A stretch of DNA of 64,000 bases from Podarcis gaigeae (Eukaryota), in NCBI GenBank assembly GCA_964106915.2, contig OZ066917.1, one strand, 5' to 3'. The notes under the pieces are model-generated. The model did no database searches and had not been told where the DNA came from. It saw nothing but the letters and a program-made list of their open reading frames with translations. The translations under genes were made by a program, and so were the position numbers. This document shows positions 7,644 through 53,200 of this stretch, piece by piece. The number at the start of each line of letters is the position of its first letter. Positions within the stretch are counted from its first letter, which is position 1.

Positions 7644-7658
7644 CCAGATTCATTCAGG

Positions 7659-32027: not shown

Positions 32028-32469
32028 CTACACCAAAGAGCCGGCTCGGCTCTGCGCCGGCACCATGACTGGCACTGCGCCTATCCTTTCCAGCGTTGCC
32101 TGGCTCACGGCGTAGGAGCGTGTGTGCTGCGGTCTTGGCTTGCGGCTCACTGAGCCATTGCTTCTGGCCATCTCCTGTGGGGAGGGGGCTGTATTGGTTG
32201 TCACCACCAATGTCTTGGGTGGAGGGGGGGCTGGGTGGCCTCCATTGGCATAGACAGGGCGGGCGCTGGTGCTTCCAGAGCGGGTGAAGGGCTGGCGCGC
32301 ATCGTTGTTGAGGCGAGCAAAGGAGTCTGTGGCATGGTTTGCTTTGGGGTCGTTCCAGTACCGGCTGTTGTAGGTGTTGGATGATGTGAGAGTGTCGTTC
32401 TCCGAGGATGAAGCATCGCCATGGAATGCTTTTGTGGATGAAGAGCATTTGGGTGGCAGATCATCCTCC
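32028..32469 (-). CDS. IGSF11: IGSF11 last coding exon 7 (cytoplasmic tail with C-terminal class I PDZ-binding motif), 442 nt incl. stop
   Basis: (R)[38 protein letters not shown]...[21 protein letters not shown]. Acceptor cttgttttcctag; phase 2 matches exon 6. Confidence 0.96.
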
Positions 32470-33109
32470 CTAGGAAAACAAGAGGCCATTGTTAGCATTG
32501 TAGTTGTCCTCCATTCTAAACACACCCATCCCTGGCAGGAACAAAAACACCTTGCACTGGCGCAGCACAAGGAGAAAAGCAAATAACCCACACCATGATG
32601 CCATGTTGGCCCAATGATGTGCCCAACTTTGACATCTCCACCTTAAGTCTTACAATCCAATTTTCTGTGCCTCTATCTCAGCATCAGGCTGTTGGGCTTC
32701 AGGTCTAACAGAGTACAATGATGAATGACAAGCAACAATAGAATTGAGCAATGCTGGCCATGCACTTCTGGGTGTCTTTTTGGTTTTATTTCCCCTTATC
32801 AATGGGGTGTAAGTGGGGAACCCCATAAGCACTTGCCTTTGACTCCCACTACTGATCAATTACCAGGAATTGTGTATTTGTTCACATGTCAACACTTGGC
32901 AACACCTAAGGAAGAAATTATGGATGGAGCTGTCTTTTATGCCTGTGCCAGGATTCTGGGTGGTCAAGCCACTACTAGTAATGAGAGAATCATGAAAGAA
33001 ATTAGTGTACGCTAAAATATTATTCTGACAGAGGTAGGAGGAACCTTCCTTGCAGCTCAGCTGGAAAGAAACTATGGCAAAAACTCTGGTATTACTGCTT
33101 TGATCCCTA

Positions 33110-33525: not shown

Positions 33526-33580
33526 AAGAAGATGATGGGGGAAAGGAAGGGACAGAGCAATATCTTGTCAAAGGCCAAAC

Positions 33581-33731
33581 CTTATCTCATTAGGAATTTC
33601 CTCCTCCTCTTCCTCCTTGTGTTTGTTCTTCCAGTAAAAGAGTGTCACAGCCACCACGGTGATGCAGATGATGAGCACCAAGACCCCTGCAGCTGCAGCT
33701 CCAGCAATCAGGCCAAAGCTCCGGGGGTGAG
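33581..33731 (-). CDS. IGSF11: IGSF11 coding exon 6 (transmembrane helix + acidic stretch), 151 nt
   Basis: (P)HPRSFGLIAGAAAAGVLVLIICITVVAVTLFYWKNKHKEEEEEEIPNEI(R). Acceptor cccacacag, donor AG|gtttgg; phase 1 to 2. Confidence 0.95.
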
Positions 33732-35502
33732 CTGTGTGGGACATGGAATACATGAGAAGACGGAGTAGGGAAAAGGTATGGAGCAAGTTCAGCCAAGCCT
33801 CAGCAGGTTTTCAGCATCAGGAGAGCCCGGCTTGATATCTCTTGTATCACTCCATCACAAGCTATTGTCCAGTGTGGGACCCCAAGAGACAAGTGGGACA
33901 GAAGCACTCTCAGGATGGAGCCTACTACAGCCCATTCAAACAAGACCTCTGCTGCAGCAAGGGGTTAACATTTCCCCAGAACCAATAATGCTCTGGAGTT
34001 TCACAGCTCAGAAATGTGGCAAGTAAGTGCAGCTCAGAGACATCTCCAGATGCTGTCTCATACGCTCCTCAAATCTTTGTTGCAGCATGGTGGTGGTAGT
34101 GGGCAGATATTGTCCCAAATTCTTGCCCCACTGGATGCCTCTGGGCATGTACTTTCCTGAGTGCCTCCTGCTCTAGTTTTGGTGGCATGAAATGGCTCTG
34201 TTCGCTCCCAAACACGACCAAGAAGGCCTAGCATGCCGGGGCACTTTTCACATGCCTGAAGGTTGGTGATAGGGTGATGGGTAAAAAAAAAAAGAATGAC
34301 CCCTTAGCCATATCAGAGGCCACAGCTCTGAGAACCAAACTAGCTCTTACAAAGGAGAGCTGTGATTGGGTTTAGTTTTCTTTTGCTGAAGGCAGCTGTG
34401 GGGCTTTTCCATCCATTTGGGCTGGGGCCATTGTGTAGGGGAGGCCATTGTGCTGCAGCCCCATCCAATGCGCACCCACACCCAACTGGAGTTGCCATTA
34501 GTTGCGAAAGGCATCATGTGCAGATGCAGTGGGCATCTGCAGGGTATCTTCTACATGGTTAATTATCAGCAGTCACCCTCGAAAGTGAAGAAAATTATAT
34601 CCAGTGATAGATGGGCTCTGAGCTTCCAGTGCAGTGTGAAAAAACACTGCACTTTCAATACAGTGGGTGGTGGTGGGGGGCCTCTGGTTATTTTTAGAAT
34701 GGGTCCAAATACCTGGTGCAAAGCAGTAGGTTTCATTCCCAAACATGCTCTTTAAAAAGAAGAAGCAAGCAGCAGGATCAACCCATTTTCTTTTGCCCTG
34801 AGCAAATTCTATTTCCTTTCCTTTTCCAGTATTTGCATTTCAAGCGCCTTAGTTTTGTCATAAGATTTAGGTGTTACTGAAGACATCTATATTTAAGAAG
34901 GCTTTCTTAATATAAGTTACCCAGTCACTTATAGAACATTTTTATATCTGTAGAAATCCTTTTGTTGTTTTTGGAATAATGTTACCATGTTTTATCCTGT
35001 TTTTATCCTGTTCAAGACTTTGATGGCTTAATGCTATGAAGTGGTGCATAAATCTGTTAAATAAATAAAAATGAGGTATTTACAGGGTTAGCATCTCTTA
35101 CTCTGGACTACAAATTTCCACACATGCAGCGAAGTTTCATGCATTACTAGAAGATGTGCTTCTGCTTTCCCGCTACCTGCTTCAACATAAAAAATGGGGT
35201 TCAAGGATCTCATTCATGATGGGGCAAGTGAGCCTGGGGAGAGGCTTCCAAATCTTACTACAAACAAGACTGAGGACTGCTCATTTCTCACATTACCGCA
35301 GAGACTGGGAAAACAGAAGGAAGACACTCATTCTTTTGCTTTCTCCATGTCTGTGTAATGCATGGGGAGGAAGTTGGGAGGGGCAACATACTGCTCCTGT
35401 AAGAACACCCTGCTTGCATCCAACATGTGACTTAACCTCTGACAGGCAATGAGACATGAGGCTGACTTGTGCAAGACAAGTCCCTCATTAAAACTGACTT
35501 AC

Positions 35503-35625
35503 GTGTAATCACTTGAACCTCAAGAGAACAAGTGCTGCTTCCGATGACATTAGAAGCCACACACTGGTAACGTCCTGATGACACAGTGCTAATATTGCGC
35601 AGAATGACTGTACCCTGAACTTGGT
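35503..35625 (-). CDS. IGSF11: IGSF11 coding exon 5 (C-half of Ig-C2 domain), 123 nt; not in the ORF track
   Basis: Manually translated: (D)[40 protein letters not shown]. Acceptor ttccttcccatctag, donor C|gtaagt; phase 1 to 1. Confidence 0.94.
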
Positions 35626-36106
35626 CTAGATGGGAAGGAAGGAAAAAACATAAATTAAATTAGAGACGTGGTATATGGGGGGTGGAGAGAAAGACAGCCA
35701 TTTCAATGCAGCCTTGAAAAGGCAAATCCAGTAAATCGTAAATTCTATGCAAGACTCTTAAGAGATAAATTAGAAAATAACCTTTAGATGAAAGCATCAG
35801 AAACAGACAAGATTAAGGTTTAAGGAGCTTACAGTGGACATTTTCTTCTTAAAGATTATTTTTTTATGTATGTGAAAGCTGAGGATAAGAGAATAAGGCA
35901 AGATAACTAGCAAGGGCCATCAACAAGCTAACACTTGTTCTTACAAGGAACTCAAATGCAGTTGTCAACTACTCAGCTTTTTATCATTCCAGAAGGAAAA
36001 AAAACATTTTCAGATCCTTAATCAAGAGCCATATCTGATTTTGAGGTCCAAACAAAGTGTAAAACAGTGGGCTGATTTGGGTGTAGTGCTAGAGCATAGC
36101 TCAGTA

Positions 36107-37482
36107 CAGTGGTGCCCCGCAAGACGAATGCCTCGCTAAACGAAAAACCCGCAAGACGAAAGGGTTTTTCAATTTTTTAGCGGCTTCGCAAGACGAATTT
36201 CCCTATGGGCTTGCTTCGCAAGACGACAGCCCATAGGGAAATCTCAGGAGACAGCGGGGAAGCGCAGCGCGCCTTCTCCTCTGTTCCCGGACCTGTCCTA
36301 AGGCTTGCGGTGGGAGGTCCGGGAACAGAGGACAAGGCGCGAAGGGCTTCTCCTCTGTTCCCGGGACTTGCGGTAGGAGGAGGGTTTTTTCTGAATGTTG
36401 GCGGTGGGGAGGAAAGCCCTCCTCCCACCGCAAGCCTTCAGGACAGGTCCGGGAACAGAGGGGAAGGTGCGCAGTGCTTCTCCTCTGTTCCCGGGGCTTG
36501 CGGTGGGAGGAGGGTTTTTCCTCCCCACCGCCAACATTCAGAACAGCATTCTACATGTTGGCGGTGGGGAGGAAAGCCCTCCTCCCACCACAAGCCTTCA
36601 GGACAGGTCCGGGAACAGAGGGGAAGGCGCGCAGCGCTTCTCCTCTGTTCCCGGGGCTTGCGGTGGGAGGAGGGTTTTTCCTCCCCACCGCCAACATTCA
36701 GAACAGCATTCTGAATGTTGGCGGTGGGGAGGAAAGCCCTCCTCCCACCGCAAGCCTTCAGGACAGGTCTGGGAACAGAGGGGAAGGTGCGCAGCGCTTC
36801 TCCTCTGTTCCCGGACCTGTCTTGAAGACTTGCGGTGGGAGGAAGGTTTTCCTCCCCACCGCCAACATTCAGAAGGCTGTTCTGAAGGCTGGCGGTGGGA
36901 AGAAAAGCCCTTCTCCCCCACCAGCCTTCAGAAGAGTTCCCGCCTAGGCTACGGATAGCAGCCTGCTGCCCCGCGCGAGGGGCGCTCTTAAGCAGAGCGC
37001 CCCTCGCGCGGGGCAGCAGGCTGCTATCCGCAGCTTGGAGAGCCCTCTGGACCTCTTCTGAAGGCTGGCGGGGGGCAAAAGTCTTTGTCCCCCCTGCCTG
37101 CCTTCCCGGGGGTTTTTAAATCGCCCCGGACAGCGGAGAAGTCTCCGCTGTCCCGGGGGCTTTTAAAATGCTGGGGGACGGCAGTGAAGCCTTCGCTGCC
37201 GCCTGCCAGCATTTTAAGATCGCCCCGGGACAGCGGAGAAGTCTCCGCTGTCCCGGGAAGGCAGGCGGGGGGAAGCAAAGACTTGCCCCCCCCCCCCCGC
37301 CGGCCTTCAGAAGAGTTTGGGGGACAGACTGTCCCCGGACCTGGTCTGAAGGCGGTTTCCATAGGAACGCATTGATTGATTTTCAATGCATTCCTATGGG
37401 AAACCGTGCTTCGCAAGACGAAAAACTCGCAAGACGAAAAGACTTGCGGAACGAATTAATTTCGTCTTGCGAGGCACCACTG
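36107..37482 (+). mobile_element. Non-autonomous Tc1/mariner (Tigger/pogo-like) DNA transposon, 1376 bp, GC-rich, internally palindromic (copy A, IGSF11 intron 4)
   Basis: TA TSD (36105-6, 37483-4); TIR cagtggtgcc(c/t)cgcaagacgaa; repeated subterminal CGCAAGACGAA motifs; 160-bp internal tandem units; no transposase ORF. Confidence 0.88.
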
Positions 37483-37601
37483 TACAATGATCCTAGGTGA
37501 GTCTCAGGCTTGCACACTCAGCCCTCCCTTCTGATGTGACCACAAGGAGTTCGAAAACCTTTGCTTCTGCTTTAGATTAGCTACAGCTTGCCATGTTATC
37601 T

Positions 37602-37649
37602 AAACAAACAAACAAACAAACAAACAAACAAACAAACAAACAAACAAAC
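37602..37649. repeat. (AAAC)n microsatellite
   Basis: Direct reading. Confidence 0.95.
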
Positions 37650-38315
37650 TGTGGTTAATTTTAAAATATGGTTTCTAGAAACAAACCAGCTTCAAATCAT
37701 AGTTTAAGAAGTTGGCTTGTTTCTGCAAACCATACTTAAAATTAACTGCAGTTCAGGGTTCTGATGAAACAACTGAGCTGTGGCTAATCTGAAATGGAAG
37801 TGGAAGTTGATGACCATACTAGAAGAGAAGAGGTAAGGGTTGTGTGGAATCCTGAGGCTCACTGTGACTCATCCTTATAACATTATACTATGCCTTAGTA
37901 GTTTAGTGGTATGTGTGAGCTGGACCAGTGAAACATCACATAAATCAATTAAAAACATGAAAGTAATTTAACAAAATAATATTAAACATATCAGCTAAAA
38001 GGGCCTGTGTGTGTGTGTGATTGTGGCCACTTTTACCCCCCCATCACTCTTTTTGACATTTTTTTCAGGGTGTGTTTGCACAAAAAGGATGAAAGTTCTT
38101 ACTCACTCTGAGTGATGGAAGGAAACACACTGCCCTCACTTTGAATTGGCTTTGTGATAACATCTTGTGGCCCCATGTTCTTCTGATATTATCACCATAG
38201 CTACATGAAGCCTGATTGTCTGGGATAACTATTCCCAGAAAGAAATAAAATCTACACCAGGACCTATTGACACAGGCAGTGAACAGCAGAAAACAGGCAT
38301 GAGCACAGCTAAATA

Positions 38316-38731
38316 CTGTAGTTTTCGCCCCATAGGACGCACCTAGGTTTTTTGGGGGGGAAATAACGGGGGGGGGGGAATTATTTCCCCCCCCCAGGCA
38401 CGGGGCTGGCGCGGGGGAAGCCCGAGCTTCCCCCGACCCCAGCCGCAAGAACAGCCTGCTATCCGCAAGCCTAGGGAGCCTGGCGGGAAGTCGCCCCGGT
38501 CTCCCCAGGCTTGCGGAGAGCTGTGCGAAGCCCGGGACTGCAGGCAGCTCTGCGCAGCCCTCGGGAGCCCAGTGCGAAGTCGCGCCAGTCTCCCGAGGGT
38601 TGCGCAGAGCTTCCTGAAGCCTGGAGAGCGAGAGGGGTCGGTGAAGCCTGCATTCGCCCCATAGGATGCACACACATTTCCCCTTCATTTTTGGAGGGGA
38701 AAAAGTGCATCCTATAGGGCGAAAAATACGG
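38316..38731. mobile_element. Non-autonomous Tc1/mariner (Tc2/pogo-like) MITE, 416 bp, GC-rich core
   Basis: TA TSD; TIRs ctgtagttttcgccccataggacgcac / gtgcatcctatagggcgaaaaatacgg; internal third copy of ttcgccccataggatgcac near 38653. Confidence 0.8.
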
Positions 38732-39435
38732 TATTTGAGGAACTATATCTGGAGGCTCATGAATGCGCCCCTTTTGCAACGAAAGTATTTACCTGTGAGC
38801 ATTCAGCATAGCCCTAGGATATAACCCTAGGATATAATGAGTTGGCAAACAGTAATGCAGGTGGCATGGGGGGAACACAATATACCAATTAAATGATTGC
38901 TTTACTATATGATTTTTTAAATATAAGATAATATTTCAGCACACCACCAAAGTGCACAATCAATAAATGGTTGTTTGTGCATGATCCCATGGCTGCTTCA
39001 CCCACATGCTCATATTCACTCCACACACTATGCAAACCACTTTTTTTTTTAGCATCTGTGAACTGGCCTTCACTCACAGACTGGAGTGGAACCATCAGCA
39101 GGAATGCAAGAGATGAATATTGGGCTGGCTCGTTAATTCAAATCCCTAATAGACATGAAGCATGCATCTCTAAAGTAAGGGTGGTTGAGCTGCAGCACAG
39201 TTCTGCAAGCCAACTATTATGGCACAGCACTCAGGCCTGCCTCTTCTGCACTGCACTCCCAGGCTCAACAGGCTAGAGACAAGACTGCACAACAGTAACA
39301 GGAATTGTGCAGACTGGTGTACCCTACAGTGGCACTGCCTCATGCTCTGGGGTGGATTTATGGCATGTTGGGCAGAAAAGGTGACCACCCCTGCTCTAAG
39401 GTATGTGTGCTTTTTTAATACTGTGATTAGAATTT

Positions 39436-39450
39436 CCACTAGAGGGCACC
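39436..39450 (+). promoter_or_regulatory. Candidate CTCF site in IGSF11 intron 4
   Basis: CCACTAGAGGGCACC matches the CTCF core consensus CCASYAGRKGGCRS. Confidence 0.5.
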
Positions 39451-39737
39451 CAGTACTCTAAAGGCTCAGTTGCTTTCGTTATTTTGGACAGTGTATTTTC
39501 TCCCTATTCTTTATTTTTAGTGAGTTTCTGCACTTATCACAGCAACATTATCACTCCCCTCCCCGCTGTGACCTTCTTGGATCTGGTGTTTCCTGCCCTG
39601 AAACCCAGGTAGTCCATCAGCAGTTTGGGATAGACCACATAAAGTTGTGACCTTAGTGCCAGCAGAACAAGTGAAGGGAAAATTAGACCAACTCTCTTGG
39701 AAAATGCAGTTGTAGGGTGGGGGGATGCAATGATCAC

Positions 39738-39893
39738 CTTGTGTGGCTGTCGGGGGCAGCTTGGGGGCACTGTCCAGTCTTTCCCAGTAATAGGTTGGCC
39801 GAGGGATGCCTTCTTCTGAACTGCATGTCAGTGTGATGTCACTGCCAATGTTCAAAGAGCCCTGAATTCTGCAGACTGGGGCAGATGGAGGAA
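39738..39893 (-). CDS. IGSF11: IGSF11 coding exon 4 (N-half of Ig-C2 domain), 156 nt
   Basis: (V)[51 protein letters not shown]. Acceptor ttttcttcctgcag, donor AAG|gtgatc; phase 1 to 1. Confidence 0.95.
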
Positions 39894-40933
39894 CTGCAGG
39901 AAGAAAAGATGGCAGAGCAACAGTTAGGTCAGGAGCTGCGTTCAACAGAAAAGTGTGACCAGTCAGGACTCTAGGCCCTGGAGGAGGAGGGGTGGGAGAG
40001 AAATTCAATTCAGTTCGCAACTGAAGGTGAACTTACAGATTTCACATTCCCCCCTAAAAAAAAATATCCTTCAAAATTTGCAGCTGTATGAATTTTGTAA
40101 TGTGGTTCCCCAGCCAAGTAATCTGTACAAAAATGAAGAGTGCATATACTTGCATATTTTAGGGAAAATCACATACAAAAATCCATTGTATTAGGGGAAA
40201 TTGCAGAAATGTGTATATTAGACAAAAGTGCATAAAAATGTTTATGGTAGGATGAATTTGAACACAACTGCTAATTTTCATTGGGACTTTATTTGGGGGG
40301 AAGTTCAAACTGATAGAGAAATGTGGAGAAATGAACTTAAGGATTGGAATAATGGAGTATGGGTAGATTTGATTTGATTTTTTAAAAAAGAGAGAGAACA
40401 AAAAGGCAGGCTGAGAAAACAAAAGATACAGATGGCTTAAGACTAATAGGGGAAGCAACAGGCGAGGTCACCTGCTAAGGCTTTTGTAGCTAGTGAGCCA
40501 GCTCAGTCATAACTGCTGACTTAATTGTGGCCATTTTCGATTAGTGTCCTCTACGGGGAAGAACAACATCTGCAGCTCCCCACCAGCTTATACAATAAAG
40601 ATATCATTAAAACTTTTTGCTTTAAGCCAATTCTGGTAGCAGAATGAAGATGGGAGGTTTCATGTTATTCCTTTTGCAAAATGATAACACAACTGTTGAG
40701 AAAAATAAGATACGATAACTTTGGAAACATCAAGTAATTTTTTCAATTAAATATTAGGGACATGATAAAAGTGAACCAGATACATGCATTCCCTCGTTTC
40801 TCCCACTTGTATTTAACACAGCAAGTACCACAACTGCTGTCAGTACTTAAACTGGAATGAGCATGTTTTGCTCAACTGCATAGACTAAGGAATTTTGTGG
40901 AAATGGTCAGTGAGCCTCTCCTCCTGTGATGTC

Positions 40934-40934
<1 letters not shown>

Positions 40935-40971
<37 letters not shown>
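40935..40971. repeat. (AGT)n microsatellite
   Basis: Direct reading. Confidence 0.95.
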
Positions 40972-41322
40972 ATATCATAAATACTTCAAAATATTGGGCA
41001 GAAAGTTGATAAATAGTAGAACTGATCTGAATGTTTGGTGGATTCCAGGGTGCTGTTTTTGAAAGGATTAAGAAGAGAAATCGTTTCTGTAGGTTGGGGC
41101 CTAAAGTAATACAGTAATACAAGGTAGTGGTCTGAGGGCTGCTGGCTTACCTTTAAGGAAGTTTTTTAAAAATAGTAATAATATGAAAGACACATAAAAT
41201 CTACCACCTCATATTATTTTACATTTATGAAGTATACACCGTAAGTCAAATTACTTTCTTCCTCCTCTATCAATGGCAATGAATTCCCCCTTTAATTGGA
41301 AACAAAGGTTTAATGAAGGGAG

Positions 41323-41687
41323 CAAAGGTAAAGGTAAAGGTACCCCTGCCCGTACGGGCCAGTCTTGACAGACTCTGGGGTTGTGCGCCCATCTCACTTA
41401 AGAGGCCAGGGGCCAGCGCTGTCCGGAGACACTTCCGGGTCACGTGGCCAGCGTGACATCACTGCTCTGGCGAGCCAGAGCCACACACGGAAACGCCGTT
41501 TACCTTCCCGCTGGTAAGCGGTCCCTATTTATTTACTTGCACCCGGAGGTGCTTTCGAACTGCTAGGTTGGCAGGCGCTGGGACCGAGCAGCGGGAGCGC
41601 ACCCCGCCGCAGGGATTCGAACCGCCGACCTTTCGATCGGCAAGTCCTAGGCGCTGAGGCTTTAACCCACAGCGCCACCTGCGTCCC
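41323..41687 (-). mobile_element. Sauria SINE, second (CpG-rich) subfamily, in IGSF11 intron 3
   Basis: Diagnostic gtacccctgcccgtacgggccagtcttgacag; TSD aatgaagggag at 41312-41322 and 41688-41698. Confidence 0.9.
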
Positions 41688-42649
41688 AATGAAGGGAGTA
41701 CCCCACCCTAATAAATTGTCTGTTTATGTGAGGAAAGTAAAAGTTGACTGAGGCAAAACAATAAATAAAATAAAAATCCCTAAGGCCCCAGGAACATTTT
41801 AGCCCCACTCACTTGACTCTTCTTGGTTGGCCAGGAATCAATCCAGCCCATGGACTGAAAGGCCCTACTCTACTTCATTGGGTTTACAGCCTGGTAAATT
41901 GGCCTCCAAGAGTTCCACGTAGGATGAATCACCAGTCAGCAGACCCTTTAAAATCTGAGGCTCAGAGCCCAATTCTCAGTCTGTGCCACTTGTCTGAAAT
42001 GTGAGGTCCCTGACAAACTCCTCCTCTTTCTCCTCATTGCTGTCTTGAACCACGGCCTCTGTCTAACTTAATTTTCGGCTGGCCTCTTAACTCCACAGAC
42101 CCTGATCAGCCTTCCCTGGAATTCAGCCTCACTTGTTTTGGACAGTGCTCCTGTCTCCACCCTGTGGTTTGGATCTTTGCACACGTCACTCACAGCAGAC
42201 CCCTGTTAAGTGATGGCAGGAGCAGAAGCTTAGATCTAGAGAGCCAAGGTTTGCTTTCTCCCCATGCTAATTAGGCTTCTTTCCCTAAAGGTCACAAAGA
42301 CACAAAATAGAAACGTCTGCCCGGTGCACCTTTTCCTGTCACCATGTACTACAATGGGAAAAGCCACTTGAGGTGAAATTCTCCTCTGCAAGAATACATC
42401 CAGTGCTTTCTGATACTTGTTACAGTATGTGAACGAGAGGGCAAGCTCCCTTGTTTCGTTTTTAGGCTTACACCCCTGAAGGTCTAATATTCCACCATCT
42501 GAAAGTAGTTTTGAACTCACAAGCCCAACATTTTGTCCCACCTGTGCCATTATGTAGCAGACTAGCTATTTCAAATTTCAAGGAAAACCAGCCTCCTGTT
42601 TCAGGCTTTTCATGATTATCAGTGGTCTGGAATAGAGCAAAGCACATAC

Positions 42650-42857
42650 CCAAGACGTTGAGCCCAATGACTCCAATATTCCGGCCACCTCGGTCTGGTA
42701 GATTGTTGACCAAACACTGGTAAGTCCCAGTGTCTGACAGCTGGGTATTGTTGATGAAGATGGAGGCACTGGTGGTTGGCATCGTCATTGCAAACCCCAC
42801 TCGCCCATAAAACTGGGGTGCACCATCAAAAATCTGACCACCCTGGTAAATAATAAC
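42650..42857 (-). CDS. IGSF11: IGSF11 coding exon 3 (C-half of Ig-V domain), 208 nt
   Basis: [69 protein letters not shown] with the DTGTYQC Ig motif. Acceptor tttgtttttcag, donor G|gtatgt; phase 0 to 1. Confidence 0.96.
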
Positions 42858-43514
42858 CTGAAAAACAAAGATATGACACTTCTCCTTAACAAAGCAATGG
42901 TTAAAAGAGGACTTGTTCACTCATTATACAGAGGCTTCAGTGTCCTGTGGTTTTAGTGCAATTAAAACACAACAATTGTGTTCTGAGGGTAAGATAAGCC
43001 ATATGGAGCTCCTGGGTACTTACTACGCACTGCTGCTACTTTTGCTACCATGGAGAAGTATTTGCACAATAGATTTAAAAGATATAGGGGAAACCACAAT
43101 GAAGTGTTCCCCTAAAGGGAAGAGTCAAGCCTAGTCAATTTTATATGTCTTTCTATTTAGAAGGAGGACACAAAAAGGCTTATAAGCAGGGAGGGAGTTT
43201 GCATATCTCCCTCCTCTGCATTTTGGAGTTCTGGAATACATGGTCTCATTTCCAAAGTGGAACCGATGCATTAGGAACCCTTCTCTGTTACTATTTTATA
43301 TTTGCAAATTTTGTACTGAGTATTGAACATGGTCTGTTCTTTCACATTCACCCACCCACACATAAAAACGATGTGCAGAATGCATTAGGGGAAAATAAAG
43401 CGGCTTTTATGCATTTGCATCAAGATTCATTTTTGTGTGCCGTTTTACTGTTTTGCATGTGTTATTTTACGTTTTGGTAAATCAGCACAAGAAAAAGCAG
43501 CAGTATTTACCAAC

Positions 43515-43515
<1 letters not shown>

Positions 43516-43552
<37 letters not shown>
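43516..43552. repeat. (GT)n microsatellite
   Basis: Direct reading. Confidence 0.95.
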
Positions 43553-43554
<2 letters not shown>

Positions 43555-43569
43555 CAATTCAAATGTATA

Positions 43570-45258
43570 CGTATTGATTGCTTTGGTCGCCCCATATCAT
43601 GACCTCTGTCGAGAGGGAAATGTGTCCCTGTTAATTCTTCTCGACCTCTCAGCAGCTTTCAATACCATCAACCATTGTATCCTTCTGAAGCAACTGCTGA
43701 ACTAGGGGTTGGTGGCACGGCCTTGCGGTGGTTCCAGTCCTACTTGGATGGTCATTCCTTGAGGGTGTTGCTTGGGGAGTGCTTTTCAGGCCTGTGGAAC
43801 CTTCAATGTGGGGTTCCGCAGGGCTCAAACCTATCCCCCATTGTTGTTTAACATCTACAGGAAACCGCTGGGTGGGGTTATCTGGAGGTTTGGAGTATGT
43901 TGTCAGCAGTATGCTGATGACACTCAGCTCTATTTCTCCTTTACATCCGCAGCTGAGGCAGTGGAAGTGCTGGACCAGCGTCTTGCCTCAGTAATACACT
44001 GGATGAGAGCCAACAAACTGAAACTCAATCCAGGTAAGACTGAGGCACTGCTAGTGGGTGGGAGAACGCCTGCTCTTAATGGGGTTACACTTCCTCTGAA
44101 GGAGCAGATTTGTAGCTTGGGGGCACTCCAGGATACTTGAGGCTCAGGTGGCCTCAGTGGCCCAGAGAGCATTCCACCAGCTTTGGTTGGTGGCCCAGCT
44201 ACGTCCCTATCTGGACAGGGATAGCCTAACTACTGTTGTCTATACTCTGGTAACCGCAAGGTTAGATTACTGTAATGCGTTATGCATAGGGCTGCCTCTG
44301 AAGACAGTTTGGAAACCTCAGCTAGTGCAGAATTCAGCAGCCATGTTGCTCACTGGAGCAAGACGGTTTGAGTATATTATACTGATCCTGGTCCGATTGC
44401 ACTGGCTACCAATTAGGTTCCTGGCCCAATTCCAAGTGCTAGTTTTGACCTATAAAGCCTTAAACAGCTCAGGACCACAATACTTCAAGGACTGCCTCTT
44501 TCCATATGAACCTACCCAGACTTTGAGATCATCTTCTGAGGCCCTTCTTCGTGTGCCTCCTCCTCGAGAGGTCTGGAGGGTGGCAACACGAGATCGGGTC
44601 TTCACTGCAGTGGCTCTCCCTCTGCGGAATGCTCTCCCCAGGGAAGTTTGTCTGGCACCTTCATTATACACCTTTAAAGGTAAAGGTAAAGGTACCCCTG
44701 CCCGTACGGGCCAGTCTTGACAGACTCTGGGGTTGTGCGCTCATCTCACTTAAGAGGCCAGGGGCCAGCGCTGTCCGGAGACACTTCCGTGGCCAGCGTG
44801 ACAAAGCTGCATCTGGCGAGCCAGAGCCACACACGGAAACGCCGTTTACCTTCCCGCTAGTAAGCGGTCCCTATTTATCTACTTGCACCCGGAGGTGCTT
44901 TCGAACTGCTAGGTTGGCAGGCGCTGGGACCGAGCAGCGGGAGCGCACCCCGCCGCAGGGATTCGAACCGCCGACCTTTTAATCGGCAAGTCCTAGGCGC
45001 TGAGGCTTTAACCCACAGCGCCACCTGCGTCCCTTTATACACCTTTAGGCACCAAGCAAAAACGTTCCTTTTTAACTGGGTCTTTGGATGACTTGATTAA
45101 CATCCTATGCCTTTTTAAAATGTGAGTTGTTGGGGGTTTTTTGGGGGGGCTTATTTTGTTGTAGTTGCTATTTTGATTATGTATTTTGTAGTTTTATATT
45201 TTGATTTTATTCTGTAAAGCATCCTGAGACCGCTGGGTATAGGGTGGTATATAAATTC

Positions 45259-45299
<41 letters not shown>

Positions 45300-45305
45300 T
45301 AATAA
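43570..45305 (+). mobile_element. L2-clade LINE 3' portion (degenerate RT), interrupted by a Sauria SINE, with (AAT)n tail
   Basis: Frameshifted motifs LLILLDLSAAFNTINH, QYADDTQLY, NKLKLNPGKTE, RLDYCNAL, LHWLP. Confidence 0.88.
44677..45033 (-). mobile_element. Sauria SINE, second subfamily, inserted into an L2 fragment
   Basis: Near-identical to 41323-41687; TSD ttatacaccttta at 44664-44676 and 45035-45047. Confidence 0.9.
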
Positions 45306-46440
45306 TTTCTTCATGTATTCCAGTGTATTTCAATAACAAGCATAAGCCTGAGTTTGCATTCATTTTAAAAAATGAAACAAAATGAAACAAATTATCTATA
45401 AAATAGGGACCCTTTGTCCCACCTATCTGAAATCTGACAAGTCTGATGTAATCAAAAAAAGATGCACAGGCATAGCCTAACTGTTCCCTCTCTCCTCCCC
45501 CTCCCCCAGAAACCTTTCTATGACCTGTATAGGCTATTCCAGCAGAATTCAATGTAAAGAAATGAGAAAAAACTAGATTTTCAATTGAATTTCATTTTAT
45601 TTCCTACCAGTAGACTGTAGGCTGTTATTGGAAAGTATCAGAGTTAAAGGAAGTAGAAAATTAGCTGGGCGTCCCATCAAAAGCAAATAGGAATAAGGTA
45701 AGGAAAATGAATAAACAAGTTCCAAATCAGTCATGAAATAGAATGAAAAGCAAATAAATGCATAACTAAACAAAAAAGAATGCAGTAACTAAATTATTCC
45801 ACCATCAACCCTCTGCATGCCTTTCTCCAGATTTAGGCCCTTTCACCAATCATTCCTGTACTATATCTGATTATCTGAATACTACATCAAGTGAGTTATA
45901 AGTCTCTGCTCATGCTCTTACTTCTTAGCAACACTCAGTGGCCTGTTTGGCACCACAAGGCTCAAATCAGAAGTTCCTCATACGGAATTTCCTCTGTCTG
46001 CTGCACTCCTACACCATAGGGTATGGGTAGCCAATGCTGTAGTCTCCAAAATTTCCTGGACTCCAACTCCCATTACCTCTGATCATTGGCCATGCTGGAT
46101 GTGGCTGAACACAGAGAAGATATCCGAAACACCAACAGTCAATGTGTGGGTCTCAGAAACATATGCTACAGAAACTCCCCAGAGCTTCATCAGACACACT
46201 TGTAAGATGTCCATTCACACATTGCAGCCAAAAAAGGGCATTTGTGGCTATAGTCTGGCTGCTTTCCACATTTTCAGAACGTAATTGGGGGAAACCAGCA
46301 CAACTGATGCAGCACTAGATTGTAAACCGAAGGGCAAGTCTTCTGTTATCTGCATTAATTTATAAGCCATCTTATGAGCCTATTGTTGGGGGGGGGGGGG
46401 TTGGCCAACTAGTTCTGTGTTTCCCCCAAGAGTCTGGTAC

Positions 46441-46604
46441 CTGTTCAGGTTGGTTGGCATTGGAGAGTGGCGTGACCATCCAAATGACGTTAAGGTTATT
46501 AAGCGCAGCACTGGTGGTAAAAGTACAGGGCAGGACCGCCGTCTGGCCCCGAGCAACTTCAACACTCCTTGTGTTCATGAACACTTCCAGGGGACTCACT
46601 AGAC
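46441..46604 (-). CDS. IGSF11: IGSF11 coding exon 2 (end of signal peptide + N-half of Ig-V domain), 164 nt
   Basis: Translates (G)[54 protein letters not shown], recognisable as IGSF11/BT-IgSF. Acceptor ttctttacag, donor CAG|gtacca; phase 1 to 0. Confidence 0.95.
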
Positions 46605-47313
46605 CTGTAAAGAAAGAGGCACCAAGGTGACATGCTGCATTTATCCAGGAGACCATTTTTCAACCTTTGCCTGCAATGACATACATACTTAGTAGGTGCA
46701 CAAATGCGAGAGCGAGCTTCCCATATTCCCTGCTGTGACCCTGAACATCCTCACTTCCTCTCCTGTTTTCCCTCCCCTCCCCGCAATGAGGCCACTGCTT
46801 TGGCCCACTTTCCAAGACTTTCCACTGTCTGGAGCAATCCAGGACAGTCTGTGGCGCCTCTCTGGCTCTTGGTGCGCAGGATGCAGGAGGCATATAGAAG
46901 ACAAAGATTCGTATTGCTAAGCTAAATAGCAGCTGTAGGGCTACAGATGGGGATGGCGCACACAACAACTGCTTCTGACAGGTAAACGTAGGAAAGGTGG
47001 CAAGGGAGTATGGAGGAGGAACGTATGCTGAGTTTGCATCTGCTTTTGTTGGGACAGGCTGGTTCTGAGGCGCAAATGAATGCAGCACCATAGAAGTGCA
47101 CAAAGCAAAAGCAAAATGAAAAAAGGAACTGCTCTCAACAAGCTCCTTGTTCGAGCCATGCCTTCCACCACCGCCACCATTTGTTATTTCCAGAGTCTTT
47201 AACTAGTGCTGAGCACTTTACAAGCTTTATAATAATTCACAACAGTTCTTGCCCACAGGCTTACAATCCACTACATTTATTTACACCCCACAACCTATTT
47301 GCATTCAGAAATA

Positions 47314-48806
47314 CAGTGGTGCCTCGCAAGACGAAATTAATTCGTTCCGCAAGTCTTTTCGTCTTGCGAGTTTTTCGTCTTGCGAAGCACGGTTTCCCAT
47401 AGGAATGCATTGAAAATCAATCAATGTGTTCCTATGGAAACCGCCTTCAGACCAGGTCCGGGGACAGTCTGTCCCCCGACCTCTTCTGAAGGCCGGCGGG
47501 GGGGGGGGGAAGTATTTGTTTCCCCCGCCTGCCTTCCCGGGACAGCGGAGACTTCTCCGCTGCCCCGGGGGATCTTAAAATGCTGGCAGGCGGCAGCGAA
47601 TGCTTCGCTGCCGTCCCCCAGCATTTTAAAAGCCCCCGGGACAGCGGAGACTTCTCCGCTGTCCCGGGGCGATTTTAAAATGCTGGCGAGCGCCAGCGAA
47701 GCCTTCGCTGCCGTCCCCCAGCATTTTAAAAACCCCAGGACAGCGGAGGACTTCTCCGCTGTCCGGGGCGATCTTAAAATGCTGGCGGGCGGCAGCGCTG
47801 CCGCCCGCCAGCATTTTAAAATCGCCCCGGGACAGCGGATGAATTCTCCGCTGTCCCGGGGCGATTTAAAAGCCCCCGGGAAGGCAGGCATGGGGGACAA
47901 AGACTTTTGCCCCCCTCCAGCCTTCAGAAGAGGTCCAGAGGGCTCTCCAAGCTGCGGATAGCAGCCTGCTGCCCCGTGCGAGGGGCGCTCTGCTTAAGAG
48001 CGCCCCTCGCGCGGGGCAGCAGACTGCTATCCGCAGCCTAGGCGGGAACTCTTCTGAAGGCTGGCGGGGGAGAAGGGCTTTCCTCCCCACCGCCAGCCTT
48101 CAGAACAGCCTTCTGAATGTTGGCGGTGGGGAGGAAAACCTTCCTCCCACCGCAAGTCTTCAAGACAGGTCCGGGAACAGAGGAGAAGCGCTGCGCACCT
48201 TCCCCTCTGTTCCCGGACCTGTCCTGAAGGCTTGCGGTGGGAGGAGGGCTTTCCTCCCCACCGCCAACATGCAGAATGCTGTTCTGAATGTTGGCGGTGG
48301 GGAGGAAAAAGCCTCCTCCCACCGCAAGCCCCGGGAACAGAGGAGAAGCGCTGCGCACCTTCCCCTCTGTTCCCGGACCTGTCCTGAAGGCTTGCGGTGG
48401 GAGGAGGGCTTTCCTCCCCACCGCCAACATGTAGAATGCTGTTCTGAATGTTGGCGGTGGGGAGGAAAAAGCCTCCTGCCACCGCAAGCCCCGGGAACAG
48501 AGGAGAAGCGCTGCGCACCTTCCCCTCTGTTCCCGGACCTGTCCTGAAGGCTTGCGGTGGGAGGAGGGCTGCGCACCTTCCCCTCTGTTCCCGGACCTCC
48601 CACCGCAAGCCTTAGGACAGGTCCGGGAACAGAGGAGAAGGCACGCTGCGCTTCCCCGCTGTCCCCAGAGATTTCCCTATGGGCTTTCGTCTTGCGAAGC
48701 AAGCCCATAGGGAAATTCGTCTTGCGAAGCCGCTAAAAAATCGGAAAACCCTTTCGTCTTGCGGGTTTTTCGTTTAGCGAGGCATTCGTCTTGCGGGGCA
48801 CCACTG
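47314..48806 (-). mobile_element. Same family, 1493 bp, inverted relative to copy A (copy B, IGSF11 intron 1)
   Basis: TA TSD (47312-3, 48807-8); reads as the reverse complement of 36107-37482 with module gains/losses. Confidence 0.88.
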
Positions 48807-49252
48807 TATATTTATCCTAGGGAAGGGCCTTTTTGGTAGTGGCACCTGCCCTGTGAAACACCTTCCCATCAGATGTCAAACAGATAAACAACTACACAAC
48901 TTTCCAAAGACCTTTGAAAGCAATCTTGTATCAGGAAGTTTTTTATGTTTGATGTTTTGCTCTTTTTTTTCCAAACAAACAATTTATATTAAACTTTTGA
49001 TTTACAAAAGTACATGCCTTGTCTTTTTTTCTGGTTGTAGAATCTTTTTTTACATTTGAAGTGAGTCGTTAGTGTTGTATACAGAATGAAATTGGGGAAA
49101 AAGAAGGGGGAAGCTGGGGTGGTGTGGTAACACTTGGTATACATGTGGGATTTTTATTCTCTATCTGTTCATTTATTATATTTCCTTGGAAGTGTTTTTA
49201 TTATGTTGGAAGTCGGTCAGTGTGGCTGGGGCAACCCAGTCAGATGGGTGGG

Positions 49253-49490: not shown

Positions 49491-49984
49491 TCTTCTGAAT
49501 CCTAACAGCAGAATTCCCACTAAAAGAACCTTAAATACCTGAGGCCCAAACCAGATGAGACATCAATACCATGCAATTAGCAATAGCTTTTTTAAAAAGT
49601 AAACTGAAGACATGAATGTCCTCATCCATAATGGGACAATGAGGCAGGGGTGTGTGTCAAAGGGTTAAACCTCCCCTGCCCTCCCCTGCCAGGGTCCCAA
49701 TCCAGATTAGCTCCTGTTCCTGCACCTGTAATTTATTCAAAAGCTAACCACACAATCGCTGTGTGATTAACATCTCATCTAGTTTGACCTCAAGTCTACT
49801 GATTCTCCAACCAAGGTGTAATCACCAGCTATTTGCATAAATGTGATTAAATGGCAAACTAGGAGTGAGCAAACTTCTTTCCCATTCAGAATGAGTTGAG
49901 ACACGTTGGATTATTTATCTGGACTTCTAGGTGAAATCTGAATAGTTTTAGATAGTCAAAACCACCCCCTTGCACTCATATGTA

Positions 49985-50226
49985 CAGTGGTACCTCAGGT
50001 TACAGATGCTTCAGGTTACAAACGCTTCAGGTTACAGACTCCGCTAACCCAGAAATAGTGCCTCGGGTTAAGAACTTTGCTTCAGGATGAGAACAGAAAT
50101 CGCGCAGCAGCGATGCGGTGGCAGCAGGAGACCCCATTAGCTAAAGTGGTGTTTCAGGTTAAGAACAGTTTCAGGTTAAGAACGGACCTCCAGAACGAAT
50201 TAAGTTCTTAACCCAAGGTACCACTG
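49985..50226 (-). mobile_element. Tigger-like MITE, same family as 26411-26641, opposite orientation
   Basis: TA TSD; cagtggtacctcaggttac...cccaaggtaccactg. Confidence 0.85.
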
Positions 50227-53200
50227 TACATATTCCTCAGCCCTAAGTATTAGTGCATACCAATAACATTGTCAGGCACTCCAGTGCCTTGAAGGTTTTG
50301 TAATGGAAGCAATCTGAACAGTGTAGATCAGCCTTTCCTCACACATGTATACAACTTAATCTGTGCAGACTTCAGACTCTGCAAAAGCCCTTAATCCATC
50401 TGTGCATGTTTGGAAGAATTATTGGAACCATACTCTCCATGCCAGGCCCCAAGTAATCCTAAAATAATCATTTATGTTCAAGAGTGTTCAGGCCCTCCCA
50501 GTTGGCCCTGTAGGTCACGCTTTGGGGACAGATAGATTTACACTGGATAGGCCACAGCCTTTGCCAAAGCTTCTAAATTCTGATACCCAGAGGCCTCTGC
50601 AGTGGTTCATCCTACAAGGCTACTAAGAACTGTGGGATGCTGTAGAGCTGGTCAGCCAAACTGCAGATTCTAGTACAAGCCAATCCCACCCTTGACCCCA
50701 AATACCAAAAACTGCCGCCTGTAGCTTCATACTTCACTGTTTTCTTACACAGCTTTCTTTTCTGTGTAAAAAAAGGGGGTATAAATGGCAAAATAGACAC
50801 ACAAGTTTATCCTGTGTGTTTATACCTTATTGATTTATTTCCTCACTTACAGTTATAAATGAACCTTTCATCCTATCGATCCTTGGGCAAGCAACAATAA
50901 AATGCCTAACTGAACCAAGTAGGCCAGTGCCACATGAAAACATTTTAAAATACTTATCAACACTTACACATCAACTCTAAAAATACATACACACACACAA
51001 CATTGATGTGAAGTTGTCCTTAAAGGGCCAGCAATATCCATGTTACAAGTGTATACTTGCTCTCACATGTATGCAGCCGGAACTCATGTACAGTATTTAT
51101 GTAACAAACGCATGTTGTAACTCCAGCAAAAGGTCCTAAACCTTTCAGCAGTGTGTACATGTAAATACATGAATGCTGGCTGCACACATGAATCCAGGTA
51201 CACATTTGTAACATCCAGTTAACCCACACAAGCAGTAGACTAGGCCACAGCTCATGGAAACATCTCTGGCATAAATATGACTCACAGAAGTGAATGAGGA
51301 TCCCATTCAGTGCAATGAGGTTGTGCAGAAGTGCCCGGCAGTCAGTATCTTGGTAAGTGAAACTGCCCACATACAGCAGTCACCTTCCTAACCAAATCGC
51401 TTAATTAACCGGTGCATCTCCACTTCCAAAGTTCAGTCTTGGAAACATACCAGCATGCTGCAAACACGCTCAGAAGAACTCTACTCACTTACATTAGCAC
51501 CAGGGGAGCAATCTTGCTATGAGTAAGGGGACTAAGCTGCTAACAGCCTGACCAGAGTGGAATCCTTTTTCGTTTGTTTTGTTTTTTGAGGCTCTCTGCA
51601 ACGCTTTACATTCCAGCCCTGAAGCATCAGGCAGCAAAGTTAATAATAAATGTTGCAATTCCGTTTCTCCTTTGTGTAGGAGAAATGTCTGGCAGATCAT
51701 TGCTTTGGCTGGGAAACATTTTTTTAAGCCAGCAGAAGCCTTCTATTCCCAGAGCCTTCTTTAAAGACAAACACACTCACACATAGCCCATAAGAATACA
51801 ATGTGGTAAGTGAACTATTCTTCAATGTCCTCCTCTCAGGGGGTTTTTTTCCTCCCCAAAAAGATGTCCTGCTTTTACACAAAATGGTTTTGGCAACCGG
51901 AACAGGATACACAGTGGCACAAAAATTATTGGGACTTAGGTCTCATCCTTACACCAAAGGCTCAGGCCAAAAAAAAAAAAAAAAAAGATTAATAAAAATA
52001 ACAAAGAAGTATGGCCACGACTGCATGAGTGTAGTCTCTGTCTTAAGAGTCCACCACCAAAGGTCTTCAGTTCCAGGCATCAATGACATTGACAGAGAAA
52101 GGACAGCCAAAGCACAAGAAGGATGTTGTCTGTGCCACAAATCCCTTCTGGCCTATGAATGAGTCAGTCTGCTACCAGGATGCCATCCACTCCAGAAGGA
52201 GCAAAGGGGGCCCTTTCCAAGCACCAAGAAACAAAACACCAAGGCCAGAGAAAGGGCAGTGACTGTCTTTGAGTTTTTGAAGCTGAGGCACCAGCTCCCT
52301 GGGTTGGGTGGAGAGGAATCACTGTATTTGTTATCAGTGTACCGTCTTCTATCCCAAGGTGCCAGGGCTCAGTGGGATCTCCACCAGGACAATACTAGAC
52401 AGCGCAGAAGTCCAGGGTAGCTGCATCATATCTGTCAAGCTCAGATAAATCTAAAGCACAAAAGAAACAATTCAGAGTTCCTCTGTTATGAAGTGAAATT
52501 TGTAGTTGTGGTTCTCACCAACAGAGGCTGGATCTGTACAGATAAAAGAAACGCTACAGAAAGAAAGGTTGTAAGAGCTCTTAGTGGAAAATCCCACTGG
52601 CGACTGATTACTGCTCTACAGGGCCATCTGGTGCCACATGTTTATAACACAGTTATAATGATGTATTTGACTAGTGGAGCTGAGTCCAGAGTTGTAGGGT
52701 TCCTTAATCATCTATTTATTTAGCCAGTTAAAAGTTTTGTGTCAACAGAGTGTAGATGGCCAGCTTGGGGAGGGAAAGAAGCCAGGTCCTAGGTCAGATA
52801 AACTAAACTCTGGGAACACAAATGTAAATCACATTTCAGTTCTGGAGTGGGAATGCTGAACACGGAAGTGGCAGTGGTAAGGGAAGTCCTCTTCTACCAG
52901 CATCTAGCCATGACATTTCACTGGCTTTCAACTGGTAAATAACAATAGGGCATTAACAAGCACACTCCCAAGGAATGTGTTCCCTATGAACATCAGACAG
53001 TATTAGCATTTAGGCACCCTATTTAAAACCTATCTGTTCACCTAGGCTTTGCCTGAGGTAGGTCTATCCATGCTGATGTATGAAGCTAATCTATTGATTT
53101 GTAATGAATTCTGTGCTTGCTTTATGAATGTAGTTTTATTGTTGATTCAACGTTGATCACTGCCATGACATTTTTTCCTCATGCTGAAAGAGTCCCATAT

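What the first reader, a model, noticed from the sequence alone, without database searches (positions are those of the whole stretch)
36107..48806. Inverted pair of 1.4-1.5 kb transposons brackets IGSF11 exons 2-4: predicted back-splicing into a 528-nt, stop-free circular RNA
Seen: two long, highly similar copies of one non-autonomous element lie in opposite orientation. One is in intron 1, 710 bp upstream of the exon 2 acceptor; the other is in intron 4, ~2.25 kb downstream of the exon 4 donor. Exons 2+3+4 = 164+208+156 = 528 nt = 176 codons, and both outer junctions are phase 1. The back-splice junction ...CAA G|GT CTA... reads Gln-Gly-Leu with no stop, and there are in-frame ATGs (FMN, WMV, AMTM). 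Known: reverse-complementary intronic repeats (Alu pairs in primates) promote back-splicing and skipping of enclosed exons. Inference: this lineage may have a TE-created >1 kb pre-mRNA duplex that yields (i) a circIGSF11 with an endless ORF of Ig-V/partial C2 repeats and (ii) an in-frame linear isoform lacking the Ig-V adhesion domain. A caveat is that each copy can also fold on itself, which would compete with the long-range pairing.
Basis: partly seen in the sequence, partly recalled or inferred. Interest (0 to 1): 0.8.

Follow-up and report, generated by a model that had tools for sequence, protein, structure and literature searches.

The report
Young inverted transposon pair around IGSF11 exons
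Two recently inserted copies of one jumping gene sit in opposite orientation on either side of three exons of the adhesion gene IGSF11 in a lizard, an arrangement known to favour circular RNAs, but no RNA data were available to show that a circle is made.

Summary
Two copies (1376 and 1493 bp) of one TA-flanked, non-autonomous Tc1/mariner-type element lie inverted in introns 1 and 4 of a minus-strand gene shown here to be IGSF11. They are 97.3% alike. They bracket exons 2-4 (164+208+156 = 528 nt, phase 1 in and out, no stop, in-frame ATGs).

New here: both insertions are lineage-specific. Contigs of two relatives about 2.5% diverged cross the copy A site with a single TA. A contig of a relative about 3% diverged does the same at the copy B site. 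The family has on the order of 10^3-10^4 copies.

Folding: the A:B duplex beats the two self-folds by 844 kcal/mol. Yet each copy alone folds 44-60 SD better than shuffles and leaves only 9-12 nt unpaired, so a kinetic trap is plausible.

No RNA run holds the locus, so back-splicing and exon skipping remain untested. The mechanism is well known: young, species-specific transposon pairs and MITE pairs flank circRNAs in other animals. The "endless ORF" follows from phase-1/1 Ig exons and is not special.

Verdict: a real, clean and testable candidate of a known kind, most likely a neutral by-product.

The parts
47312..48808 (-). Copy B of the non-autonomous Tc1/mariner-type element. The element proper is 47314-48806, with TA target-site duplications at 47312-47313 and 48807-48808. 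It lies in the intron upstream of exon 2 and is inverted relative to copy A.
   Evidence: Terminal inverted repeats at 47314-47335 and 48785-48806. Alignment to copy A. Empty site in a relative: contig L001 joins 48807 to 47313 with a 2-nt TA overlap.
36105..37484 (+). Copy A of the same element. The element proper is 36107-37482, with TA duplications at 36105-36106 and 37483-37484. It lies in intron 4, 2253 nt past the exon 4 donor and 479 nt before the exon 5 acceptor.
   Evidence: TIRs at 36107-36128 and 37461-37482, with 1 mismatch. Repeated CGCAAGACGA subterminal motifs. Single-copy-depth contigs of organisms F and G skip 36103->37482.
46441..46604 (-). IGSF11 exon 2 (164 nt, phase 1 in, phase 0 out), the first half of the Ig V-set domain.
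   Evidence: AG/GT borders. Translation. V-set profile positions 4-41. Junction with exon 3 confirmed by orthologues.
42650..42857 (-). IGSF11 exon 3 (208 nt, phase 0 in, phase 1 out), the second half of the V-set domain.
   Evidence: 99% identical to Pogona vitticeps IGSF11-like isoform X2.
39738..39893 (-). IGSF11 exon 4 (156 nt, phase 1 in and out), the first half of the Ig C2-type domain. Its donor would be the back-splice donor.
   Evidence: The boundary ...PPTATQ| is confirmed by orthologues.
35503..35625 (-). IGSF11 exon 5 (123 nt, phase 1 in and out), the second half of the C2-type domain.
   Evidence: Sequence and borders. I-set profile 57-90 and Ig_3 56-78. The exon 4|exon 5 junction is seen in P0083.
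33568..33786 (-). ORF containing the transmembrane exon (...LIAGAAAAGVLVLIICITVVAVTLFYW...). Exact exon borders were not determined.
32028..32495 (-). Coding part of the last exon (cytoplasmic tail ending ...AQSRAGSLV, stop codon at 32028-32030). The upstream border is approximate.
   Evidence: Named hits are IGSF11 (Bombina 70%, Galemys 69%).

Best explanation
Two young copies of a very abundant, non-autonomous, TA-targeting (Tc1/mariner-type) DNA transposon inserted independently, in opposite orientation, into introns 1 and 4 of IGSF11 in this lizard lineage. Both insertions came after its split from relatives that differ by about 2.5-3% in flanking DNA. In the pre-mRNA the two copies are almost perfect reverse complements over about 1.3 kb. 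If they pair, exons 2-4 are looped out: the exon 4 donor is brought near the exon 2 acceptor (back-splicing to a 528-nt circle), and exon 1 is brought towards exon 5 (skipping). I infer that this raises back-splicing and/or skipping to a low but detectable level as a by-product of transposon activity, with no selected function. I also infer that the effect is damped because each copy is strongly self-complementary and is transcribed minutes before or after its partner. Shown here: the anatomy, the gene identity, the youth and lineage-specificity of both insertions, and the energies. Inferred only: any effect on splicing.
For: Pair and exon anatomy. Gene identity: tail, named IGSF11 hits; exon 3, 99% to Pogona IGSF11-like. 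Exon junctions confirmed by orthologous products. Transposon nature: TA duplications, 22-nt TIRs, repeated subterminal motif; no Pfam domain in its ORFs; repeat depth about 10^4 times the unique depth at the termini. Precise empty sites with a single TA: copy A in organisms F and G at single-copy depth, copy B in contig L001. Energetics: cofold -3073.2 versus self-folds -1043.7 and -1185.1 kcal/mol, with 1281 of 1374 pairs intermolecular; 19 perfect runs of 30 nt or more. [quoted passage not shown]
Against: There is no RNA evidence. No run on record as RNA holds the locus, and the 'RNA?' run held only transposon pieces. None of the 6 multi-exon IGSF11 products retrieved shows a permuted exon order, though these are mostly genome annotations and would not show circles. 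Each copy self-folds extraordinarily well: z = -60 and -44 against shuffles, 82-85% of bases paired, 66-78% of pairs spanning under 200 nt, and the longest free stretch only 9-12 nt. Copy B is made about 9.8 kb of transcription before copy A. Stronger hairpins can inhibit circularization (PMC4201285). Copy A is 2.25 kb from the donor. In vertebrates, long perfect dsRNA is a substrate for ADAR and helicases that counteract pairing (established knowledge, not tested here).
Confidence: 0.5

Rival explanations
1. The pair is inert for splicing. Each copy collapses co-transcriptionally into its own hairpins, and any residual long-range pairing is removed by helicases or editing, so IGSF11 is spliced exactly as in relatives without the insertions. 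The arrangement is a chance product of a high-copy family.
For: Self-fold z-scores of -60 and -44, 82-85% of bases paired, mostly short-range pairs, and only 9-12 nt left unpaired. The family is extremely abundant, so inverted pairs within about 10 kb are expected many times per genome. Strengthening hairpins can inhibit circularization (PMC4201285).
Against: At equilibrium the intermolecular duplex is favoured by 844 kcal/mol. Self-helices are 82-92% complementary, against 95-98% for A:B. Very short pairings suffice experimentally (PMC4201285).
Confidence: 0.35
2. The main consequence is the double-stranded RNA itself and not a circle. A roughly 1.3-kb intramolecular duplex in the pre-mRNA is hyper-edited by ADAR, retained or degraded, or diced into small RNAs that match thousands of genomic copies. 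The result would be lower IGSF11 output in this lineage or a contribution to transposon silencing.
For: 19 perfect runs of 30 nt or more, up to 129 nt, and 1281 predicted intermolecular pairs. High copy number of the family. This rests on established knowledge of ADAR and Dicer substrates; nothing here tests it directly.
Against: No RNA or small-RNA data. The same kinetic-trap argument applies. This is not exclusive of the circRNA outcome.
Confidence: 0.12
3. The circle is made and translated round and round from an in-frame AUG into repeats of Ig-V plus half of the C2 domain, with a biological role.
For: 528 nt = 176 codons, no stop, in-frame ATGs.
Against: Any circle of coding exons whose length is a multiple of three has this property, and Ig exons are typically phase 1/1. 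The product would lack the signal peptide encoded upstream of exon 2, so it could not form Ig disulfides in the secretory pathway. No IRES or m6A evidence. Both insertions are very young, which leaves little time for selection.
Confidence: 0.03

Closest known systems
Inverted Alu/SINE pairs that drive exon circularization in mammals (e.g. ZKSCAN1, HIPK3; Liang and Wilusz 2014, PMC4201285), and the young species-specific TE dimers of Gruhl et al. 2021 (PMC8516420)
   Same: Reverse-complementary copies of one young, lineage-specific transposon family sit in the two introns that flank internal coding exons with canonical splice sites.
   Different: The repeat here is a DNA transposon derivative of 1.4-1.5 kb and not a ~300-nt SINE. 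The pair is far more complementary (97%), and each arm is itself highly palindromic. The circle has not been observed.
nMITE/hAT inverted pairs flanking circRNAs in the newt Pleurodeles waltl (PMC11872487), and DNAREP1_DM repeats at Drosophila laccase2 (PMC4617980)
   Same: Non-autonomous DNA-transposon copies act as the complementary intronic elements.
   Different: Those cases start from observed circRNAs. This one is a prediction from DNA alone, in a squamate, with a Tc1/mariner-type (TA-targeting) element.
Loop-out exon skipping by inverted Alu pairs (PMC13019027)
   Same: An intronic inverted pair encloses exons whose removal keeps the reading frame (528 nt; exon 5 enters in phase 1).
   Different: The exon 2 acceptor has a good polypyrimidine tract, whereas the Alu study finds weak acceptors most prone to skipping. 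Skipping was not observed here.
circIGSF11 of rat mammary gland and human bone-marrow stromal cells (PMC4600687, PMC7868402)
   Same: Same host gene, and IGSF11 is a known circRNA host.
   Different: Mammals lack this element. Which exons those circles contain was not established here, so orthology of the circle is unknown.

Membership tests
Tc1/mariner-superfamily non-autonomous DNA transposon (MITE-like) | TA target-site duplication | tested here: met
   TA on both sides of both copies. Relatives' empty sites keep exactly one TA.
Tc1/mariner-superfamily non-autonomous DNA transposon (MITE-like) | Terminal inverted repeats starting CAGTG, with repeated subterminal motifs | tested here: met
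   22-nt TIR CAGTGGTGCC(C/T)CGCAAGACGAA at all four ends. The CGCAAGACGA motif occurs 10 times, and only inside the two copies.
Tc1/mariner-superfamily non-autonomous DNA transposon (MITE-like) | No transposase gene; mobilised in trans by a DD(E/D) transposase with matching TIRs | tested here: inconclusive
   The longest internal ORFs have no Pfam hit, so the element is non-autonomous. The autonomous partner was not searched for. At 1.4-1.5 kb the element is longer than classical MITEs.
Tc1/mariner-superfamily non-autonomous DNA transposon (MITE-like) | High copy number and recent mobility | tested here: met
   Summed contig depth at the termini is 0.5-2.9 million, against 45-100 on unique flanks. 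Thousands of contigs are 99% or more alike. Two insertions are absent in relatives. Depth gives an order of magnitude only.
Inverted-repeat-driven exonic circRNA locus | [quoted passage not shown] | tested here: met
Inverted-repeat-driven exonic circRNA locus | Canonical acceptor and donor at the back-splice exons | tested here: met
   Exon 2 acceptor ...ctttctttacag|GT and exon 4 donor AAG|gtgatc.
Inverted-repeat-driven exonic circRNA locus | Back-splice junction reads, RNase R resistance | not testable with these tools
   No RNA run holds the locus. The single read-laying run showed zero depth on the exons in the 'RNA?' run.
Inverted-repeat-driven exonic circRNA locus | Circle level depends on the repeats (deletion, inversion, or natural absence) | not testable with these tools
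   Natural controls were identified, namely relatives with empty sites, but no expression data are available.
IGSF11 orthologue (CTX/CAR family of Ig adhesion molecules) | V-set plus C2-type Ig domains, one TM segment, cytoplasmic tail with C-terminal PDZ-type motif; best named matches are IGSF11 | tested here: met
   Pfam hits exon by exon. TM ORF. Tail ending ...SLV with named IGSF11 hits. Exon 3 is 99% identical to Pogona IGSF11-like. CAR is the nearest solved relative.
Rolling-circle-translated circRNA (infinite ORF) | Length divisible by 3, no in-frame stop, in-frame AUG | tested here: met
   This is expected for about one third of coding-exon circles and for most Ig-exon combinations.
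Rolling-circle-translated circRNA (infinite ORF) | Cap-independent initiation and a detectable repeating polypeptide | not testable with these tools
   Needs ribosome profiling or proteomics.

The most novel reading that the evidence does not exclude
The two lineage-specific insertions created, within the last ~1-1.5% of sequence divergence, a new circular or exon-skipped output of IGSF11. This would measurably change the dosage of full-length IGSF11. The gene is needed for melanophore migration and survival in zebrafish (seurat, PMC3420941) and is a synaptic adhesion molecule. The change would contribute to a lineage-specific trait such as colour pattern in this lizard.
Probability: 0.04. Interest if true: 0.7.

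Novelty: new member of a known kind. Interest (0 to 1): 0.33.

Why it matters
If the circle or the skipped isoform is made, this locus would be a very clean natural experiment on transposon-driven circRNA birth outside mammals. Both arms are dated as younger than the split from close relatives that retain precise empty sites. The pair is the only copy pair of this family in 64 kb. The host gene has known roles in pigment-cell patterning and synapses. It would also test how a strongly palindromic element (self-hairpin) competes with long-range pairing, a question that Alu-based work addresses poorly. If nothing is made, it becomes a useful negative example: 1.3 kb of 97% complementarity would not be sufficient.

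Tried and rejected
1. RNA evidence. The look-up of sequencing runs returned no run on record as RNA. The best 'RNA?' run held only transposon fragments and had zero depth on exons 4 and 5. The single read-laying run and its 6-kb limit prevented laying exon 2 and exon 4 together, or the copy B site.

2. Joined sequences. Frames were checked exon by exon, and the junction codons were read from the sequence.

3. Exact-product look-ups of two ATG ORFs beside copy B found nothing. The homology route then worked.

4. Rfam found no family in either copy, so there is no known miRNA or other RNA.

5. Pfam on transposon ORFs found nothing.

6. The alternative tail of Pogona isoform X2 (after exon 4) has no counterpart in this window.

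7. Exon 1 was not located. There is no CpG-island-like region at 48.8-64 kb and no orthologous first-exon sequence was in hand.

8. Assembly artefact (false inverted duplication) is rejected. The copies differ at 35 positions and by two indels, each has its own TA duplication and unique flanks, same-species contigs match the flanks (1 difference in 1242 nt), and relatives show precise empty sites.

9. A composite transposon or an inversion of the exons is rejected. Exons 2-5 are collinear with orthologues.

Full report
OBSERVATION

The window holds two long, nearly identical sequences in opposite orientation, at 36105-37484 (copy A) and 47312-48808 (copy B). The repeat finder reports blocks of 715 nt (98% complementary), 249 nt (95%) and 198 nt (98%), plus shifted registers caused by internal 160-nt and ~100-nt tandem repeats. 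A global alignment gives 97.3% identity over 1304 aligned columns: 35 differences, 22 of them transitions. There are two indels, of 76 and 193 columns, inside the tandem-repeat parts.

Each copy begins and ends with a 22-nt terminal inverted repeat, CAGTGGTGCC(C/T)CGCAAGACGAA, flanked by TA. These four termini are the only ones in the 64 kb, where 0 are expected by chance. A CGCAAGACGA motif recurs subterminally ten times, and only inside the copies. The internal ORFs have no Pfam domain, and Rfam finds nothing there. This is a non-autonomous, TA-targeting Tc1/mariner-type element. At 1.4-1.5 kb it is larger than a classical MITE.

THE GENE

The exons are on the minus strand, so copy B is upstream and copy A downstream.
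- Exon 2 is 46604..46441 (164 nt).
- Exon 3 is 42857..42650 (208 nt).
- Exon 4 is 39893..39738 (156 nt).
- All three have AG/GT borders.

Translated by reference in their frames, the exons are stop-free. Exons 2+3 encode a V-set domain and exon 4 the first half of a C2-type Ig domain. Exon 5 is 35625..35503 (123 nt, phase 1/1) and completes that domain. It lies 479 nt beyond copy A, so copy A really is in intron 4.

A transmembrane exon lies at about 33.6-33.75 kb, and a cytoplasmic-tail exon ends ...AQSRAGSLV at 32028. The tail finds only IGSF11 among named proteins: Bombina 70% and Galemys 69% identity, E about 1e-50. Exon 3 is 99% identical to 'IGSF11-like isoform X2' of Pogona vitticeps. 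Annotated products from Pogona, Pavo, Polyodon, Cervus and Monodon confirm every exon border. They are collinear, exon 2-3-4-5.

The phases are 1/0, 0/1 and 1/1, and the junction codon G|GT was read directly. Exon 1 was not found in the window.

AGE AND LINEAGE-SPECIFICITY (NEW)

I laid contigs of four runs on 35400-39950.

- Copy A is absent in two relatives. In organisms F and G, one contig at single-copy depth (69.7 and 74.6) runs 35401-36103 and continues at 37482-37593. It skips 1378 nt with a 5-letter ambiguity (GTACA). That is the pre-insertion site with a single TA. Their unique flanks differ from the window by 29/1238 and 32/1219 positions (about 2.3-2.6%).
- The same-species sample (X19, 1/1242 differences) shows no empty-site contig, and its contigs break at the element.
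- Copy B is absent in a third sample. I found a relative's Logan contig through the 147-aa intronic ORF next to copy B (P0122; locus L001 from sample ERR14042333). Its bases 1-71 match window 48877-48807 and its bases 70-951 match 47313-46432 (97.05% identity). The two matches overlap by exactly the TA. This is a precise empty site.

So both arms were inserted after the split from relatives about 2.5-3% diverged. Whether ERR14042333 is the same taxon as F or G is unknown.

Depth over the element's termini is about 10^4 times the unique depth. The internal 160-nt-repeat part is about ten times more abundant, relative to unique depth, in the source species than in F or G. The tool warns that depth is not copy number, so I treat this as an order of magnitude only. 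This fits a recent burst of the family. It also means that nearby inverted pairs should arise by chance repeatedly in this genome.

Notes of other agents on this genome call it a wall lizard. I did not test that beyond the squamate best hits.

FOLDING TEST

On the transcribed strand:

| Measure | Copy A | Copy B |
|---|---|---|
| Self-fold energy (kcal/mol) | -1043.7 | -1185.1 |
| Bases paired | 82% | 85% |
| Pairs spanning under 200 nt | 66% | 78% |
| Mean energy of dinucleotide shuffles (kcal/mol) | -564 | -635 |
| z-score against shuffles | -60 | -44 |
| Longest unpaired stretch in the self-fold | 12 nt | 11 nt |

Folding the two copies together gives -3073.2 kcal/mol. That is 844 kcal/mol better than the two self-folds combined, and 1281 of 1374 pairs are intermolecular. 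The A:B alignment has 19 perfect runs of 30 nt or more, the longest 129 nt.

Kinetically the caveat stands. Copy B is transcribed about 9.8 kb before copy A and can fold into tight local hairpins. Neither copy carries AATAAA/ATTAAA or a consensus donor on the transcribed strand, so premature termination or exonization is not suggested.

RNA EVIDENCE

There is none. No run on record as RNA holds the stretch. The best 'RNA?' run had only transposon pieces and zero depth on exons 4 and 5. Back-splicing and skipping remain predictions.

COMPARISON WITH WHAT IS KNOWN

- Inverted intronic repeats of 30-40 nt suffice for circularization. More stable hairpins do not always help and can inhibit (PMC4201285).
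- In a newt, nMITE and hAT inverted pairs are the most frequent pairs flanking circRNAs (PMC11872487).
- Inverted Alu pairs also promote loop-out exon skipping, especially at weak acceptors (PMC13019027). The exon 2 acceptor here has a good pyrimidine tract.
- IGSF11 already hosts abundant circRNAs in rat mammary gland and in human stromal cells (PMC4600687, PMC7868402).

The locus is therefore a new candidate member of a known kind. Three things set it apart: the length and near-perfection of the duplex, the palindromic nature of each arm, and the demonstrated youth of both insertions.

The 'endless ORF' is unremarkable. It follows from phase-1/1 Ig exons, and the product would lack the signal peptide encoded upstream. 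The skipped isoform would lose the V domain and half of the C2 domain and would probably misfold.

VERDICT

- Most likely (about 0.5), the pair causes low-level back-splicing or skipping as a neutral by-product.
- About 0.35 that it has no measurable effect because of self-folding and unwinding.
- Smaller odds for dsRNA-centred effects or a translated circle.

IGSF11's role in zebrafish melanophore patterning (PMC3420941) makes a phenotypic consequence imaginable, but it is very speculative. Interest is moderate to low: the case is clean and testable and the natural controls are identified, but the mechanism is well known and the key product is unseen.

Noticed in passing
window 38316-38731: A second, unrelated-looking TA-flanked MITE of about 416 bp in intron 4 (TIR CTGTAGTTTTCGCCCCATAGGA...). 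A contig of organism G joins 38313->38732 (empty site), while contigs of E and F break there. It is therefore older than copy A but still absent in one relative. It shares a short GCTGCTATCCGCA-like segment with the large element.
   Followed up: partly
window 7080-11399 (+): L1-like LINE with long open frames of 187, 903 and 308 aa. The 903-aa frame starts with an endonuclease-like MSLQLLSWNINGCN... sequence. It is possibly a recently active copy, downstream of IGSF11.
   Followed up: no
window 41324-41687 and 44676-45033: Two SINE-like copies, 98-99% identical, in direct orientation in introns 3 and 2. Older relatives of the same family lie at 12.8-13.2 kb, 17.0-17.35 kb and 24.97-25.3 kb.
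   Followed up: no
window 26409-26644 and 49982-50228: Another inverted pair (about 235 nt, 91-93% complementary). One arm is in the intron upstream of copy B, the other about 5.4 kb past the IGSF11 stop codon. It is probably outside the transcript or in a long 3' UTR.
   Followed up: no
window 36105-37484 and 47312-48808: Both transposon copies meet CpG-island-like criteria (GC 0.60, CpG observed/expected 0.70-0.75 over 1.4-1.5 kb). This fits their youth, and they could act as intragenic methylation targets.
   Followed up: partly
window 36312-36919 (internal 160-nt repeats of the element): Relative to unique depth, this internal part is roughly ten times more abundant in the source species' sample than in the two relatives. 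The termini are similarly abundant in all three. This suggests a recent burst of this particular subfamily.
   Followed up: partly
window 60997-61052 (+): The only Rfam hit in the window is a tRNA-like sequence (34 bits, model positions 9-63), perhaps a SINE head or a tRNA pseudogene.
   Followed up: no
window 22353-22567: A tandem repeat with a 43-nt unit and about 4-5 copies.
   Followed up: no
protein P0050 (Pogona vitticeps IGSF11-like isoform X2): This annotated short isoform starts at the ATG that corresponds to the in-frame FMN ATG of exon 2. It leaves the canonical path right after exon 4 (...TATQ|GKRQGAKK...). No counterpart of that tail exists in this window.
   Followed up: yes
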